Of a DNA stretch of 64,000 nucleotides, positions 33,718-42,029 are shown one piece after another. The position numbers were made by a program, and so were the translations under genes. The notes beneath the pieces are model-generated. The model did not search any database. It was not told where the DNA came from and saw nothing but the letters and a program-made list of their open reading frames with translations. Numbering within the stretch: the stretch's first letter is position 1; each line of letters begins with the position of its first letter. The stretch covers positions 15,624,001 to 15,688,000 of the forward strand of contig NC_135263.1 of NCBI RefSeq assembly GCF_964204865.1. The letters are read 5' to 3'. This DNA is from Styela clava. Lineage: Eukaryota.

Positions 33718-35167
33718 AGTGGTTCCCAACCAGATTTTGGTGAGCCACGAAGAGATTTCATTTTCGAACTTATTCCAAGTGATTCCAATCCCTTGAATTT
33801 CCAAAGAATTGTTCACGGCTCTTGCTAACAAACAGAAACTGCAAATTTGTCGATGTCAACCAAGGTAATAAATTATTGTGCGAAATTTTTCCCAAATTTG
33901 ACCAAGGAATTATTATTTGACTAGTAGAATTGCGATTATTGCCTATTTATTTAATTAATATTTAAACTCAAAATAACATTCAGGATTTACGCAATGACTT
34001 TTCAGGCTTTTTATTCACCATTCAATGTGAAAATAAAACAGACACAATAGGAAAGCAAAAGGTCAACTATCGTTAAATATCCGCATTTCGACGTCAGAAA
34101 TGATAATATTGTTAGCTTAAAGTTGGGACAGTTTATTTATAATCGGTGAAGAGAAAGATCAAAACCGACCTAAAAGATAAAAATCAGAATAAAATCCCGA
34201 ATTCACTCTTTAATAGCCGTCTTTAACATATGTCGCCCATATGAACGCATAGTTCTCCAAGAAATATAAAACCAAACGTTGCGTAAGAATTAGTCCTTGT
34301 AAAAAAGGAGAGGACGGGCGGAAATAGCACACCAACATTAGAATGCCTAGCATTCTGGATGCCCATTGTATTTGTATTGAAAATATCCGATATTCGACAA
34401 TTCGTTAAAAATATTCGATTCGATAAAAATATTCTATTTTGCCCATTCTTGCAATCTCGAACACAGACAGGGTTATTTTTCGCATAGTTTCTGCGGTCTG
34501 AAAAGTCGAATAAGCGTTTCGACATAGTAATGCTACTATCTTTGCCATCAAAGTAGGCTCGGGCCTTGCACGAAATTCATAACGTCGGTGAAAATTGTTC
34601 ACAATAACTTTAAACCTATTTAGTCTTTTTACTCTTTTTTAGCGATAATAACTAATTGTTGTAATGAAATACGGTTTGTTTGCCTTATTCATTTCTTTCC
34701 CTAGTGCCGACAATTACACCGTTGAATGATTTTGGCAATGGGAGAAACATTAAATTGTAACAAAAATGAATTAGGTTGTGCAAAAGTGAGAATACCTGTG
34801 ATAACAATAACGCTACACCCAGGGGAAGGGCGAGAAAAACCAAAGCGTATCGCGTCACGTATTACCCGTGCGGCCGCGCATCTTTTAAAATAATGTGAGG
34901 TGCTCCGGAGGTGGGTCTCGTGTACATTATTGTAAGAAAACAGTTATAATATCGGTAACTATTAACGATTCATTTTAAATACAGGATATGTTATATTAAG
35001 AAGGATAGAATTTCACTTATCTGATCTTCTATGTTTTTTCTTATTTTATTGCTAAATGGCTTCAAGAGTAGGAAATGTTCCTGTTTTGTGTGTGATAGTT
35101 GTGCCGCGAATATTTAAATAACTCAATAATTGTGCCGCGACATAAAAAAAAAGGTTGGGAACCACTG
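33718..35167. mobile_element. Probable hAT (Charlie-like) non-autonomous element containing or nested with other repeats
   Basis: Matching ends cagtggttcccaacc / ggttgggaaccactg. No clean 8-bp TSD, so the pairing of the ends is uncertain. Confidence 0.5.
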
Positions 35168-36055
35168 AATGATTTTAAAATCGAATATTTTTTCGAATCA
35201 AATCTTGAATACTTCGAAGATGTAGTGACTGCTTTATTGCATTGGGCCCTCCAGACATATTATTTGGTGGAAACACGTCATCTATCATTAAGACAGTTCG
35301 CCGAGTGTTCACGCACATTAATTAACATGTTGCATCAATAACTCAATCGGAAGAATAGAGTCATGTCAGAATAGCATTTTAAAAATTAAACATGAATAAA
35401 AAACTGAGGGATTTATCTCGACTCGCCGGCGGACAGAAAAAAAATGGCGACGATTCGAAATTCCCATCTGAACCGATTCCAATAATTTACTATTACCAAG
35501 CTCTACTCATCGGTCTTTCCTTGTGATGTTTTGATTATCTTAGCACTGAAGTGGGCGAGGCATTAAATAATTGCAGAGGCCGCAAATAGGAAGTTCTTGG
35601 ACGGATTTGCGAACAGCTAGCACGAACTAAAAAAAGCAGCATCAATAAAATCCTAAAATTTACTGTCGTCGGTGAAATGCGGTTTCACATGGATTTGTTT
35701 TATATTATACATATATTATAATAACGCACCCCTTTCTCCGCCTAGAACTAGAATGCCCAGAGGTCACCAGCGCTCTTTTGCGCTCTTTCAACTCTTAAAG
35801 TTGAATTTTCTACTATTTAAATATTATATAATTATAAGGGTTAACAAAAATGAATACAGTCAAAAATGAATTACACAGCACCTAATATTTCTTTGAGATT
35901 TTACATAACAAAACAAATAAAATTATTTCTATCAGGACAGTGAAAATAGTAGTACCGCTAAATGTTTGGTTTGTGTGATAAAAACCTTTATAAGATATTT
36001 CTATGAATATTGAACAAAGCATTTCAAAGTATACATAATTTACTGGTGACTTGAA

Positions 36056-36634
36056 CTAATCAGAATACAAAACTTCATGAACAGGATAGTCGAATTCTGA
36101 CACTGGGATTTCATTGCATAATTGCACAGAATAAGCCAAAGCCAATAAATATGGGTGGTATCCATTTTCTTGTAACTTTTTAATGTAATTGTCATAATAT
36201 CCCTTCCCTCTGCCAAGACGTTTCCCATCAGTTGAAAAGCCAAGACCAGGCATTAATATTAGGTCCAAGCCGCCTGTAACCAAGGCATTTGGTCTTGAAT
36301 TATCATTATCTGATGGCTGCTTAATATGCCATGATGTTTCGGGTAGGCTGTTGTAGTCTTCCAAAGATTCCAGTTTTACCATATCCATGGTGTTCCCTAT
36401 ATACTTTGGTATATAAACATCTTTTTTCTGTTGAAATGCTTGTTTCAATATTGCATCAGTCTTAACCTCATCATTCATACTTAAGAATATCGATAACCTC
36501 TTACTGGATACATATTTAGGGTGTTGAAGAACTTGTTTGGTGACATTATTTGACTGCAATAACTTTTCCTCTTCTGTTAGTGAAGAAATTCGCTTTTTAA
36601 TCTCCTTTCTGAGCTGCTTTTTAGCTGCTTGCAT
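36056..36634 (-). CDS. MTHFS: 5-formyltetrahydrofolate cyclo-ligase (methenyltetrahydrofolate synthetase), intronless, 192 aa
   Basis: AKKQLRKE, SKRLSIFLSMNDEV, MDMVKL, LPETSWHIKQP, TGGLDLILMPGLGF, RLGRGKGYYD and EVLY are all present; full length. Confidence 0.96.
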   Translation of the reverse strand: MQAAKKQLRKEIKKRISSLTEEEKLLQSNNVTKQVLQHPKYVSSKRLSIFLSMNDEVKTDAILKQAFQQKKDVYIPKYIGNTMDMVKLESLEDYNSLPETSWHIKQPSDNDNSRPNALVTGGLDLILMPGLGFSTDGKRLGRGKGYYDNYIKKLQENGYHPYLLALAYSVQLCNEIPVSEFDYPVHEVLYSD

Positions 36635-37283
36635 GTTGTTCAGCCAACTGTTGAATCAACTTTTTCCAATGAGCCCTTTTCTTTTTTATATATGAGGCAC
36701 AAACATTATCTAAAATACTGCCATTTTGAAAAGATTCGTTCTTCAAGTAATATTCAAATAAACACTCGGTTATTGCAATTACATACATACCACAGTCATT
36801 ACCATTTGTTTGTTTAGGACATTGCATCTGAGTAATAGTAACACTTGGAAAATCAAATAAAGCAGCAAATTGCTTACATAGCTGGTTAGCAGGTTGTCTA
36901 TTGAAACATGTTGATGAATTAGATAAAGAATCAAAATGAAAAAAACATTTTGACGAAAAGTCGCAAATGATCAGACTCCAATGAATACCACCTGGATAAA
37001 GTGTATTGTTATCATTCAATGGTATGAATGCAAGTTTTTTCGAAGTGAAATTATGTGGCCCTATTATGGCTGAGGCCTCTTCGGTTGTGAGTGTTTTCAA
37101 CAATTGCACCACACTAGGATTCATGAAGGCAACGATGTCTTTAGAGTTTTTGAATTGTTCGACTTCAAAATACTCATAAACGAATCCGATTATCTTATCA
37201 TTCAGCCATTGTGAATCATTCAGAAGTAATAAGTCTGACGTATACAACAAACTGTCTCCGAAACTTAATATTATTTCATCCAT
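36621..37283 (-). CDS. SENP8: NEDD8-specific protease 1 (SENP8/NEDP1/DEN1), intronless, 220 aa from the ATG at 37283
   Basis: ILSFGDSLL..SD, WLNDKIIGFVYEYF, PLNDN...GGIHWSL (catalytic His), FFHFDS (Asp), PKQTNGNDCGMYV (Gln, Cys) and YIKKKRAHWKKLI. The ORF-track start at 37292 is TTG; the first ATG is at 37283. Confidence 0.95.
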   Translation of the reverse strand: MDEIILSFGDSLLYTSDLLLLNDSQWLNDKIIGFVYEYFEVEQFKNSKDIVAFMNPSVVQLLKTLTTEEASAIIGPHNFTSKKLAFIPLNDNNTLYPGGIHWSLIICDFSSKCFFHFDSLSNSSTCFNRQPANQLCKQFAALFDFPSVTITQMQCPKQTNGNDCGMYVIAITECLFEYYLKNESFQNGSILDNVCASYIKKKRAHWKKLIQQLAEQHASS

Positions 37284-37946
37284 AGAAATCAATCAATAGT
37301 ACAGCGTTGTAAACGAAATAGTTTAACAATATAGTCCAAAACTATTGGAATAAAAAACAATTTTGCAAGGCAAGATCCTGAATAAGGCTTGCAAAAGATT
37401 TCATTTTAATATCTAAAACATCATACTTTCATGGGCAGTCAAACATTATTTTTTTAATTACTGCAAATCAACCTGAAAAAATATATAGTAAGTAAAAAAT
37501 ACGGTGCGAATTTTCACTCAAAGTGATTAAAAATGAATTCCGATTCTGGTTGTTACTTGAAATTTTAGTGTAGAAACTACTGCATGAAACAAATATCTGA
37601 GTATACAATGCAATTCTGTCACTAAATTTTCTGCAATTTCGGGGACTAACGTAGTTTTGAACCACAATTCTGACAAGTAGGCCTACTTCTAACTAAGGGG
37701 GAAACCCACTGGCCCCAGAGTAGTCAGAGGTCAGGAGGTGAGAAGGTGGAAGTATGTTAGGTACGAAACTACATGAGACCCAAATACCGGTACAAGTATC
37801 GTGTATCATGAGACAGCTGTATGAAGCCCATGTTCAGATATTGCCCCGCGATTAGAGAGTGAATGAGCAAGAACCCCATCACATCGAGACCCTAACCACA
37901 CAGAAATGTACTTTCCCGGCCTTTGACCCCCACAATATTTTTCCTA

Positions 37947-38419
37947 TAGACCTTTCCCCGACCTTTGACCCCCGGAATGCAAAATTTTCGGAGATATTTT
38001 AAGAGTGCTTTTGCGAGTTGGCGCCTGTAAAATGGGGTATGTGCTTCAAACTATCATTACGATTCATCGCATACAACAATCTGTTTTTTTAGAAGTACCG
38101 ATAATAAATTTTAGCTTAGTCTATCACAAGATTTCTACACTAATTTTTTATTACTGCAATTAAATTAAAACTCCTAGGAAACTTATTCATTGTTCATTGA
38201 ATTATCTGATTTATATTTGAGTTTCCGAAACACAACTGAAAACTAACGGATAGAGTTCAAAAACGCGGTAATGTTTACACCACACTTGACGATCTGTCTG
38301 AGTGAGAAAAGTGTCTGAGCGGATGCGAAAAGGGAGCACTGTTTCGTCACGTTTTGCATTTTGCTGATTGGCCAATGTCACGAAGTAAACAAGGAAATCG
38401 ATGCTCGGGGAAAGGTCCA
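37947..38419 (-). mobile_element. MITE copy 2, inverted relative to 31601-32100
   Basis: Ends tagacctttccccga / tcggggaaaggtcca, TA on the left flank. The interior is the reverse complement of copy 1 with scattered substitutions and small indels. Confidence 0.88.
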
Positions 38420-38989
38420 TGCTCCACCATCGCAAGATTTGATCCTTTCGGGAGTGATACAGCTAGATGTCGCTTGCAAACTGCTTAACAAGTTTAAAAC
38501 AGCCATTTTTATTGAAAATATTCAAATACGTGCCGCTCACTGATTGTCAATTCAAGCCTAGTACCGGTATATCGTAGCTTTTTCTGGACTAATTTTGAGC
38601 TGAACTAAAACTTCCCGGAAGACACAATGGCAATCAGGTTAGTTGATTCACAGCCAACGCTTAAAATCGACAAAAAACAGGCAAACCCACGAAAACGGGG
38701 CGATTTTTGGAAGCATGCTTATATATCCGTCTAAACTAAGCGGTTCAAGAAATTGCAAATGTTACGTCATTGTTACGGAAACAAACAAGGAAAACGATAC
38801 TCGGGGAAACATCCATAGGTACTTTGCTATGCTTGTTTACAACTGCTTGTCTGAGGAAATCTGATTTTGGTCAGAGAGAGAGAGAGATTTATTTTTTGTC
38901 AATCAAAATGAAATAACAGTCATCGTAATATTAACAAGAACAAGACTAAGAACAACAAAACGACCGCTATGTCCAATACGTGTCCAATA

Positions 38990-39140
38990 ATAACGAGAGA
39001 GCTACGCTCAAATGTATGGACACATCTGTTCGCAGTACAGTACGGTTTACCGTACAGTCAGATCACAGTCTACAACAAGAGAGCTACGCCCAAATATATG
39101 GACACGTCTGTTCGCAGTACAGTACTGTTTACCGTACCGT
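38990..39140. repeat. Tandem duplication, unit about 82 bp, followed by a larger duplication (39230-39415 vs 39555-39730)
   Basis: agagagctacgc.caaat.tatggacac.tctgttcgcagtacagtac.gtttaccgtac occurs twice; cgcagaacgtt..tgacgtcat.gcaaacaa.aacaaatctcacagagcta occurs twice. Confidence 0.85.
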
Positions 39141-40610
39141 CGATCAGCGTAAGGAAAAAATTGTAGCAAAGTACCGTAAGGACTTCGTTACGGACGTGAC
39201 ACGTGATCAAAAAGAAGAGGAGTATCGGCTATGCGTCCGCAGAACGTTCGCTGACGTCATGGCAAACAAAAACAAATCTCACAGAGCTAACAGGAATATT
39301 TGAAATAAATAAAAGTAATACGCTTCTGGAGAAAAATTTCATCTTTAACCAGTAAAAATTTCGAAGCAATCGGTCCAGTAATGAAAGAGAAAAGCGTGTT
39401 TTTAGATTTTCCATTAGATGTCCAAAAAGTGTCAAAGAACAACAACAACAACAAGACCAACATAATATTGAAACGATCGTTATGTCCACTACGTGTCCAA
39501 AAATAAATTCACACCAAGCGAAGCAGTACAGTAGGACACAAAGTGGCGTCCGATGCCCGCAGAACGTTTAATGACGTCATAGCAAACAAGAACAAATCTC
39601 ACAGAGCTATCAGATATATTTGAAATAAATAAAAGTAATAGCCTTCTGGAGAAAAATTTCATCTTTAACCACTAAAAATTTCAAAGCAATTGGTCCAGTG
39701 ATCAAAGAGAAAAGCGTTTTTTTAATATTACCATTTCACTATAATTACACTGAACGAATTCAAATAATTTATACTGCATATGTGAATTTATTAGCAGAAA
39801 TGTTTCATTCCATGGCACATGTACACATTGAAGATGTAACTAACGTGACGAAACACTACAAGATTACTTTTGTGTTAGTGTGCAGCAGGACTTTTGGTTT
39901 GCATGGTGCATAATTCTTTATATTAGTAATATCTGAGTTGATAGCATATAATAGAATGGCCAAATCATATCTGAAATCTCGTCCAAACCATGTCTGGTCA
40001 ATTAGCATATTCTTGTGTGGGATTTGCCAGTTGCCATATGCATGGACATGATGGCCAAGGTAGCTGTTTTTCTCGATATAAAAGGTTAATTAGTTTCAAT
40101 TTTGGGTAAGCGAACACGTACTACTTTTTTTTATCAATACCTTCCCTCTTCCCTCTTTTTCGTTTCGATCATTTTATATTTTGCAATATAATTTCAATTT
40201 GTGCAAAATACCATTATTTAAAAGAATGCTTTCATAATTGAAAATAGTAAATTCATGTAAATATTGTACATAGTATAAATCGTGAGAGACATTTATATAT
40301 TGACACGAACCTGTTATTTTTATGCCTATTTAATATAATTGGGTGGCAACTGACTCTGATGACCCCCAAAGGTCGTATCGTTGCCCCCCAGTCATATACC
40401 GAAAACTATTTTTTTGATATTTGTTTATGTGTGCATAAATTGTTTTCTTGGTTTGACAAAATGAAATAAACTCTCTCTCACTCTCTCTCATCTGAAATCT
40501 GTACGCTCCAAACCTGTAGGTTTCGTTTGCTTTCCCAATTCTAAAATCAGTTTTATTCATTTTGTTTTTATCAATTAGTAGAAATAAACTTATACTCTTA
40601 TTATTTGGTG

Positions 40611-41546: not shown

Positions 41547-42029
41547 ATGTTAACAACAAAGGCTGTGGTGGCATCAAGACTTGTCGCCCAGGCTCGTCAA
41601 CAATTTCAAAAGACAGCAGCAATTCAGGACAGAGAATACCATAAGAATGTTATTGATCATTATGAGAAGCCGAGAAACGTTGGCACTTTGGACAAGAAAC
41701 TAAAAAATGTTGGTACGGGACTGGTTGGTGCACCTGCTTGTGGTGACGTCATGCGTCTGCAAATTGAAGTTGATGATAATGGAAAAATTACAGATGCGAA
41801 GTTCAAAACATTTGGATGTGGTTCTGCGATTGCCTCAAGCTCGCTTGCTACTGAGTGGATAAAGGGAAAAAGCATTCAGGAAGCTGCAACAATCAAGAAC
41901 ACTCACATCGCAAAAGAGCTTTCACTCCCACCTGTCAAGCTTCATTGTTCTATGTTAGCGGAAGATGCCATACAAGCGGCTCTGAAGGACTATAATATCA
42001 AACAGTCCCCTATGAAACCAAACCAGTAA
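41547..42029 (+). CDS. ISCU: Mitochondrial iron-sulfur cluster scaffold ISCU, intronless CDS, 160 aa
   Basis: Basic presequence, then YHKNVIDHYEKPRNVG, GAPACGDVMRLQI, FKTFGCGSAIASSS and LPPVKLHCSMLAEDAI. Confidence 0.98.
   Translation: MLTTKAVVASRLVAQARQQFQKTAAIQDREYHKNVIDHYEKPRNVGTLDKKLKNVGTGLVGAPACGDVMRLQIEVDDNGKITDAKFKTFGCGSAIASSSLATEWIKGKSIQEAATIKNTHIAKELSLPPVKLHCSMLAEDAIQAALKDYNIKQSPMKPNQ

What the first reader, a model, noticed from the sequence alone, without database searches (positions are those of the whole stretch)
36056..37283. SENP8 and MTHFS form an overlapping same-strand bicistron (14-nt CDS overlap) in an animal genome
Seen: on the minus strand the junction reads ...ttgattcaacAG ttggctgaacaac ATG CAA GCA GC TAA aaag.... 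The MTHFS ATG (36634) lies inside the last codons of SENP8, in the +1 frame, and the SENP8 TAA is at 36623-36621. Both ORFs are intact, intronless and full length. There is no intergenic space for a poly(A) site or promoter. Established: tunicate operons are normally resolved by SL trans-splicing between non-overlapping genes, and human SENP8 and MTHFS are separate genes, both on chromosome 15q. Inference: MTHFS needs a special route to expression. (a) Trans-splicing or alternative cis-splicing to the AG at 36649-36648, 13 nt before the ATG, would cut off the SENP8 C-terminal codons and stop, making the two mRNAs mutually exclusive products of one pre-mRNA. (b) Termination-reinitiation at the overlapping stop/start. 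(c) An antizyme-like +1 shift at AGC-UAA, which would give an in-frame deneddylase-folate ligase fusion. (d) A promoter internal to SENP8. Routes (a) to (c) would couple NEDD8 processing to folate metabolism.
Basis: partly seen in the sequence, partly recalled or inferred. Interest (0 to 1): 0.85.

Follow-up and report, generated by a model that had tools for sequence, protein, structure and literature searches.

The report
Overlapping SENP8-MTHFS sea-squirt operon pair
Two unrelated housekeeping genes (a NEDD8 protease and a folate enzyme) lie head-to-tail and share 14 coding bases, most likely as a sea-squirt operon squeezed so tight that one primary RNA can yield only one of the two messages; how the second gene is expressed was not seen directly.

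Summary
On the minus strand an intronless SENP8 ORF (37283-36621, 220 aa) and an intronless MTHFS ORF (36634-36056, 192 aa) overlap by 14 nt. An AG lies 13 nt before the MTHFS ATG. Contigs from four runs show no indel at the junction. Both genes are the only full copies in the genome.

Probable RNA contigs from three studies cover both ORFs, two of them as one gapless piece. The three closest SENP8 homologs sit on Logan contigs of 1472, 4779 and 1848 nt. These are the same lengths as the contigs of three of the closest MTHFS homologs. The linkage is therefore old. The overlap itself looks derived, because the SENP8 tail here is 3-5 residues longer than in relatives.

My best reading (about 0.5) is a Ciona-type, intercistron-less, spliced-leader operon pushed to a negative spacing. 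Every usable acceptor lies before the SENP8 stop, so the two mRNAs must overlap and exclude each other per transcript.

Leaky scanning fits poorly (18 intervening ATGs). Reinitiation and a +1 frameshift fusion have no support. The scan has noted similar tight pairs elsewhere in this genome. I rate it a new variant of a known kind, of moderate interest.

The parts
36621..37283 (-). SENP8 (deneddylase, Peptidase_C48) coding sequence, single exon, 220 aa plus TAA
   Evidence: Catalytic His101, Asp118 and Cys164, and Gln158, are invariant in the alignment with 6 homologs. Named hits are 'sentrin-specific protease 8'. It is the only full copy in the genome.
36056..36634 (-). MTHFS (5-formyltetrahydrofolate cyclo-ligase) coding sequence, single exon, 192 aa plus TAG
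   Evidence: N-terminal M1, K5, L8, R9, K10 and K13 are invariant in 11 relatives, so ATG 36634 is the true start. An in-frame TGA lies at 36658-36656, just upstream. It is the only full copy in the genome.
36621..36634 (-). 14-nt overlap of the two coding sequences. It encodes the conserved MTHFS residues M-Q-A-A-(K) and the non-conserved SENP8 tail (H)-A-S-S-stop.
36648..36649 (-). Candidate splice acceptor AG for the MTHFS mRNA, 13 nt before its ATG and 25 nt before the SENP8 stop. The pyrimidine tract is weak (6 of the 18 preceding bases).
   Evidence: Sequence only. No spliced-leader junction was seen in the contigs.
37342..37343 (-). AG after a T-rich tract, 58 nt before the SENP8 ATG. 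It is a candidate acceptor or 5' boundary of the mature SENP8 RNA. A 12-nt insertion polymorphism sits exactly here.
   Evidence: The X1 and X3 contigs end at 37331 and 37342, with zero depth at 37374-37519. The X9 contig runs on to 37474 and carries the insertion. The DNA contig also breaks at 37342, so that end may only reflect the polymorphism.
35859..36055 (-). 3' untranslated region of MTHFS up to the end of the main X1 contig. Weaker or longer coverage continues to about 34940.
   Evidence: tables 2 and 8.

Best explanation
SENP8 and MTHFS form a two-gene tunicate operon, transcribed from one promoter upstream of SENP8 as a primary RNA of about 1.5 kb. SENP8 is translated from RNA that keeps the junction. 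Its 3' end must lie beyond 36621, either inside MTHFS or at the MTHFS poly(A) site. MTHFS is translated from RNA whose 5' part, all of SENP8 up to an acceptor in its last 30 nt, has been replaced by the spliced leader. The most likely acceptor is AG 36649-36648.

Every acceptor that keeps the MTHFS ATG lies upstream of the SENP8 stop. The two mature mRNAs therefore overlap in genomic coordinates, and each primary transcript can give only one of them. The weak acceptor would set the ratio.

Shown: the ORFs, the overlap, their integrity, coverage by probable RNA contigs, and conserved linkage. Inferred: co-transcription, spliced-leader addition, the acceptor used, and mutual exclusivity.
For: (1) Anatomy is confirmed and there is no assembly indel.
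(2) Runs X1, X3 and X9 behave as RNA. Their depth is zero in the flanks 37520-37665 and 38542-38687, which the DNA run X10 covers. Single contigs 35859-37331 (X1) and 35630-37342 (X3) span both ORFs.
(3) The three SENP8 homologs most like ours (64, 47 and 45% identity) each sit on one Logan contig, of 1472, 4779 and 1848 nt. MTHFS homologs at 77, 64 and 70% identity sit on contigs of exactly those lengths. In the 1472-nt contig only about 230 nt remain for untranslated regions plus spacer.
(4) Ciona operons have no intercistronic DNA, are resolved by the spliced leader, are enriched in single-exon genes, and were proposed to give upstream or downstream mRNA exclusively per transcript (PMC1488885; PMC2760879).
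(5) The genome has a GH6 domain match over the Pfam cut-off. From my own knowledge, among animals this occurs only in tunicate cellulose synthase.
(6) Leaky scanning on a dicistronic mRNA fits poorly: 18 ATGs lie between the two starts, against 13.1 +/- 2.7 in codon shuffles.
Against: No spliced-leader junction, 5' end or 3' end was observed. All runs were contigs, where short leader tips are lost. The Ciona leader pattern is not enriched in this genome, so the leader of this species was not identified here. The acceptor at 36648 has a poor pyrimidine tract. A contig across two overlapping genes does not prove one transcript. The Ciona rule, poly(A) on the G of the acceptor AG, would here give a SENP8 mRNA without a stop codon, so a further unproven departure is needed.
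Confidence: 0.5

Rival explanations
1. Independent internal promoter: MTHFS has its own transcription start inside the SENP8 coding sequence, giving an ordinary capped monocistronic mRNA. The two genes merely overlap.
For: Nothing in the contig data excludes it. The candidate acceptor is weak. Some relatives have MTHFS on contigs of about 900 nt, too short to hold both genes (P0012 at 912, P0019 at 904). That fits monocistronic MTHFS mRNAs of any origin.
Against: Tight linkage is kept in at least three relatives whose SENP8 has diverged to 45-64% identity. Operons of single-exon genes are the common tunicate solution. No separate coverage step at the junction was seen in X1 or X3, though contig depth is uninformative.
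Confidence: 0.2
2. Alternative cis-splicing: a short 5' leader exon upstream of, or within, the SENP8 5' region is spliced to AG 36648, skipping SENP8, as with the alternative first exons of human MOCS2.
For: The AG lies 13 nt before the ATG. X9 RNA extends upstream to 37474, so a longer 5' region is transcribed.
Against: No joint skipping the SENP8 body is listed in three RNA runs, although the joint table is truncated and contigs drop rare forms (table 5). GT sites in the 58-nt leader are poor donors (output).
Confidence: 0.1
3. Translational coupling on one dicistronic mRNA: ribosomes that finish SENP8 at UAA 36623-36621 move back 11 nt and reinitiate at AUG 36634, or enter internally.
For: Stop and start lie within 14 nt. 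Contigs are compatible with an abundant dicistronic RNA.
Against: The upstream ORF is 220 codons long. From my own knowledge, reinitiation after long ORFs needs a TURBS-like element. No UGGGA motif lies in the 120 nt upstream. The 181 nt around the junction fold no better than shuffles (z +0.63). In the closest relatives the SENP8 C-termini differ, so the ours-type overlap is not conserved as a coupling device would be.
Confidence: 0.07
4. Programmed +1 frameshift at AGC-UAA, giving a SENP8-MTHFS fusion protein.
For: The +1 frame after AGC continues into MTHFS from its fifth codon.
Against: There is no stimulatory structure. The best 150 MTHFS representatives are at most 315 aa, and the long ones carry no C48 domain. 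The MTHFS initiator Met and N-terminus are conserved as a free N-terminus in 11 relatives. The relatives' SENP8 ends are incompatible with the same shift site.
Confidence: 0.02

Closest known systems
Ciona intestinalis intercistron-less operons resolved by the spliced leader (Satou et al. 2006, PMC1488885; Satou et al. 2008, PMC2760879)
   Same: Same-strand housekeeping genes with no intergenic DNA. Single-exon genes, especially the first one. Functionally unrelated partners. Per-transcript mutual exclusivity was already proposed there.
   Different: In Ciona the two mRNAs abut exactly, with poly(A) on the G of the acceptor AG, and the coding sequences do not overlap. Here the coding sequences overlap by 14 nt, so abutting mRNAs are impossible unless SENP8 loses its stop codon. 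Spliced-leader use at this locus is unproven.
Caenorhabditis SL1-type operons (no intercistronic sequence), as discussed in PMC1488885
   Same: The upstream 3' end and the downstream trans-splice site coincide, so maturation of one mRNA precludes the other.
   Different: They are nematode operons and no coding overlap is described for them in the papers read here. The upstream genes carry AAUAAA, whereas no AATAAA lies near this junction.
Human MOCS2 (MOCS2A/MOCS2B overlapping ORFs on one locus); from my own knowledge, not checked here
   Same: Two proteins are made from overlapping same-strand ORFs. The solution there is alternative 5' exons that give two mRNAs.
   Different: The MOCS2 products are two subunits of one enzyme, and the mechanism is cis-splicing in a vertebrate. 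Here the partners are unrelated and the organism has operons.
Other tight or overlapping same-strand pairs noted by this scan in the same genome (LYRM7-CINP 23-nt overlap, VMA21-SNX25 9-nt spacer, ADAT2 in GLO1 with ATGA, EHHADH TAATG)
   Same: Same genome, same theme of operon-like units with a vanishing or negative spacer.
   Different: They involve different genes. Several involve shared exons or introns, whereas this pair is two complete intronless ORFs. Those notes are unchecked by me.

Membership tests
SENP8/DEN1 (Peptidase_C48) | Full-length C48 catalytic domain with His-Asp-Cys triad, about 210-220 aa, orthology to SENP8 | tested here: met
   Pfam PF02902 at E 3e-19. H101, D118 and C164 are invariant. 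Named homologs are 'sentrin-specific protease 8' at 36-42% identity over 95-98% of the length.
MTHFS (5-formyltetrahydrofolate cyclo-ligase) | Full-length PF01812 domain with conserved N-terminal K/R motif and GxGKGYYD motif | tested here: met
   Pfam at E 4e-53 covering profile positions 1-185 of 186. 50-77% identity to animal MTHFS. Invariant columns are listed.
Ciona-type spliced-leader operon | Same-strand neighbours with less than 100 nt, typically 0, between them | tested here: met
   Coding-sequence spacing is -14 nt.
Ciona-type spliced-leader operon | Downstream mRNA begins with the spliced leader joined at an acceptor AG at the boundary | tested here: inconclusive
   An AG lies at 36649-36648. 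No leader-bearing loose end is listed in the contigs of 3 RNA runs, but leader tips are lost in contigs and the table is truncated. The species' leader was not identified.
Ciona-type spliced-leader operon | Upstream mRNA is polyadenylated on the G of that acceptor, so the two mRNAs abut without overlap | tested here: not met
   By sequence logic, every AG before ATG 36634 lies upstream of the SENP8 stop at 36623-36621. An abutting SENP8 mRNA would have no stop codon, so the pair can only be a variant of the type.
Ciona-type spliced-leader operon | A dicistronic precursor RNA exists | tested here: inconclusive
   Single contigs of probable RNA runs span both ORFs (X1 1473 nt, X3 1708 nt). Overlapping mRNAs would assemble the same way.
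Ciona-type spliced-leader operon | The organism is a tunicate that trans-splices | tested here: inconclusive
   A GH6 domain match over the cut-off in the own genome points to a tunicate. Earlier scan notes report spliced-leader RNA gene arrays and name Styela clava. My own leader pattern searches were blank.
Termination-reinitiation (TURBS type) | Stop and start within a few nt, plus an upstream 18S-complementary UGGGA motif and structure | tested here: not met
   Stop and start are 11 nt apart, but there is no UGGGA in the 120 nt upstream and no significant fold.
Antizyme-like +1 frameshift | Conserved shift site, a stimulatory 3' structure, and a fusion as the conserved product | tested here: not met
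   No structure. No fusion among the 150 best MTHFS representatives. The junction is not conserved in relatives.

The most novel reading that the evidence does not exclude
The pair is expressed from one mature dicistronic mRNA by translational coupling: ribosomes terminating SENP8 reinitiate 11 nt upstream at the MTHFS AUG, or a small fraction shifts +1 to make a fusion. That would be a cellular animal example of stop-start coupled translation of two full-size enzymes.
Probability: 0.07. Interest if true: 0.8.

Novelty: new variant of a known kind. Interest (0 to 1): 0.42.

Why it matters
In Ciona operons the upstream poly(A) site and the downstream trans-splice site are the same nucleotide, and how one cut serves both mRNAs is still unresolved. 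A pair whose coding sequences overlap removes the ambiguity. If both proteins are made, the two mRNAs must overlap and each primary transcript must choose one fate. The locus is therefore a natural test case. It could show whether upstream 3'-end formation in tunicate operons can be uncoupled from the acceptor, and how the SENP8:MTHFS ratio is set. It does not, on present evidence, indicate any functional link between neddylation and folate metabolism.

Tried and rejected
One length match (912 nt, P0154 and P0012) and one at 1188 nt are too short to hold both genes and are coincidences.
- **Leader pattern searches.** The Ciona spliced leader plus GT and its 3' part were searched in the own genome and were not enriched over controls. 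Inspected hits on C13 and C6 were relics or unrelated repeats. The leader of this species stays unidentified here.
- **Metagenome scan with the MTHFS alignment** found only distant eukaryotic or bacterial genes. The eukaryotic contigs L019, L020, L028 and L098 have no SENP8 match anywhere; L019 includes 3 kb upstream of its MTHFS.
- **MTHFS fragment on contig C16** is an internal piece of about 180 nt at 80% identity. It does not reach the junction, so it says nothing about mRNA ends.
- **Polymorphisms in the RNA runs** were 5 synonymous and 5 non-synonymous among the listed sites. That is too few, and the table too truncated, for a selection test.
- **The X9 contig break at 36595/36597** looked at first like a poly(A) branch. 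The non-overlapping ends fit a SNP bubble at 36596 better.
- **The hypothetical +1 fusion** was not searched as a joined sequence. Its two parts were searched apart.

Full report
**Observation.** The minus strand of 35700-37700 and the mechanical ORF list show two uninterrupted ORFs.
- One runs from ATG 37283 to TAA 36623-36621 (220 aa).
- The other runs from ATG 36634 to TAG 36058-36056 (192 aa).
- They share 36634-36621, 14 nt, with the second ORF in the +1 frame of the first.
- An AG lies at 36649-36648, 13 nt before the second ATG.

Pfam assigns the first ORF to Peptidase_C48 (E 3e-19) and the second to the 5-formyltetrahydrofolate cyclo-ligase family (E 4e-53, whole profile).

**Are the genes real and are the starts and stops right?**
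- The C48 protein has the invariant His, Asp and Cys, and a Gln, in an alignment with six homologs.
- Its named relatives are 'sentrin-specific protease 8' of about 210-220 aa.
- In an alignment of MTHFS with ten relatives, the initiator Met and K5, L8, R9, K10 and K13 are invariant.
- An in-frame TGA sits eight codons upstream of that Met, and the next Met is residue 53. ATG 36634 is therefore the start.
- Typical SENP8 C-termini end at ...L-A/S-x-K. The tail here (…LAEQHASS) is 3-5 residues longer and not conserved.
- The overlap therefore encodes conserved MTHFS residues in one frame and a free-riding SENP8 tail in the other.
- Both genes are the only full copies in the 377-Mb genome. The other C48 hits are repeated ORFs at 28-31% identity. 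The only other MTHFS hit is an internal fragment of about 180 nt.

**Assembly error?** Contigs of four public runs were laid on 34600-38950.
- X1 has one contig, 35859-37331, with 0 gaps.
- X9 has a contig, 36597-37474, whose only indel is a 12-nt insertion at 37341.
- The DNA run X10 has a contig, 35185-37342, with 0 other letters and 2 put-in letters that the tables do not place.
- None of the listed differences lies in 36597-36695, although the difference tables are truncated (44 and 13 rows not shown).
- The overlap is real, in three studies.

**Expression.**
- X1, X3 and X9 are only guessed to be RNA. They do behave like RNA: contig totals are small (55-79 Mb) and depth is zero in flanks that the DNA run covers (37520-37665 and 38542-38687).
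- In X1 and X3 one contig spans both ORFs. Coverage stops at 37331 and 37342, next to an AG (37343-37342) that follows a T-rich tract.
- X9 reads on to 37474. The end at 37342 coincides with a 12-nt insertion polymorphism that also breaks the DNA contig, so it is not a proven 5' end.
- Downstream, the main X1 contig ends at 35859, about 200 nt past the MTHFS stop.
- The tool warns that a contig across two genes is not one transcript. With overlapping genes this caveat is strong.
- No spliced-leader loose end and no joint into 36647 is listed. Leader tips are lost in contigs, and both tables are truncated.

**Relatives.**
- The three SENP8 homologs most similar to ours are P0002 (64%), P0138 (47%) and P0140 (45%). 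Each occurs on a single Logan contig, of 1472, 4779 and 1848 nt.
- MTHFS homologs P0009 (77%), P0013 (64%) and P0010 (70%) occur on single contigs of exactly the same three lengths.
- I take this as co-location in three other species. In the 1472-nt contig the two ORFs leave only about 230 nt for everything else.
- Two other length matches (912 and 1188 nt) cannot hold both genes and are chance.
- In amphioxus hybrid assemblies the two genes lie on contigs of different lengths.
- A marine eukaryotic contig with MTHFS has no SENP8 within 3 kb upstream. The linkage therefore looks lineage-specific.
- The relatives' SENP8 ends (…AAKSQ, …IAKR, …SKKH) cannot be read from the MTHFS start in the way ours is.
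- For the closest relative, the only overlap compatible with both protein ends is a 4-nt ATGA at an upstream Met called by the gene finder. Otherwise there is a short spacer.
- The 14-nt overlap is therefore probably a recent derivation of an older tight pair. That could not be confirmed without the DNA.

**What kind of unit?**
- In Ciona about a fifth of genes lie in operons. The genes abut with no intercistronic DNA, and poly(A) of the upstream mRNA is added to the G of the acceptor AG used for the downstream mRNA.
- Single-exon genes are over-represented there, and the authors proposed that a given transcript can yield only one of the two mRNAs (PMC1488885; PMC2760879; PMC7986045).
- The present genome has a GH6 domain match over the Pfam cut-off. 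From my own knowledge, among animals this is a tunicate trait.
- Earlier notes of this scan name Styela clava or a close relative. They also report spliced-leader gene arrays and other tight or overlapping pairs. I treat these as leads.
- A tunicate operon is therefore the most economical reading.

**The twist.**
- Every AG that keeps ATG 36634 lies before the SENP8 stop.
- If the Ciona rule were followed at 36648, the SENP8 mRNA would end ...CAA-CAG-poly(A) without a stop codon.
- So either the SENP8 3' end forms further downstream (within MTHFS, or at the MTHFS poly(A) site, meaning SENP8 is read from the dicistronic RNA), or expression works differently.
- This is the one respect in which the pair departs from the known type, and it is why I call it a new variant.

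**Alternatives tested.**
- *Leaky scanning.* 18 ATGs lie between the two starts, more than the 13.1 +/- 2.7 in codon shuffles. This route is very unlikely.
- *Termination-reinitiation.* The upstream ORF is long, there is no UGGGA motif, and the 181 nt around the junction fold no better than shuffles (z +0.63).
- *+1 frameshift fusion.* There is again no structure. An exhaustive HMMER search of 1.84 billion representatives found no MTHFS relative longer than 315 aa among the best 150, and the long ones have no C48 domain.
- *Internal promoter or cis-splice from a 5' leader exon.* Neither can be excluded with contigs.

**Verdict.** My confidence that this is a spliced-leader operon with overlapping, mutually exclusive mRNAs is about 0.5. 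The remainder is spread over an internal promoter (0.2), cis-splicing (0.1), translational coupling (0.07) and frameshift (0.02). No functional coupling of neddylation and folate metabolism is indicated. The pair is a useful natural test of how intercistron-less operons are resolved. Its interest is moderate, and similar cases have already been noted in this genome.

Noticed in passing
window 41547-42029 (+): Intronless 160-aa ISCU/NifU-type iron-sulfur scaffold ORF (Pfam NifU_N, E 6e-53), about 4 kb upstream of the pair on the opposite strand.
   Followed up: partly
window 37666-38541: High-copy repeats lie directly upstream of the SENP8 5' region. Summed contig depth in the DNA run reaches 10^4 to 4x10^5, against about 60 for unique sequence, with many loose ends at 37749, 37781 and 38420.
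   Followed up: no
window 37341/37342: A 12-nt insertion polymorphism sits exactly at the AG that precedes the SENP8 leader. It is present in the X9 contig and probably heterozygous in the DNA run, where contigs break there.
   Followed up: partly
G000 C5, C8, C13 and C17 (e.g. L004, L005, L006): At least ten further C48-domain matches at 28-31% identity to SENP8 residues 22-174, eight of them in open frames of 234-513 aa and several in inverted pairs a few kb apart. They may be transposon-borne Ulp1-like proteases.
   Followed up: no
L002 1454-1630 (G000 C16 near 10759322): A fragment of about 180 nt at 80% identity to the middle of MTHFS (window 36520-36348), a decayed partial copy.
   Followed up: yes
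L015 (G000 C13:22154697-22154733, minus strand): Two copies of TTTGAATAAG followed by GTAAA, 25 nt apart, resembling the 3' end of the ascidian spliced leader plus its donor.
   Followed up: partly
window 38992-39146: An 82-nt unit repeated 1.9 times in tandem (90% match).
   Followed up: no
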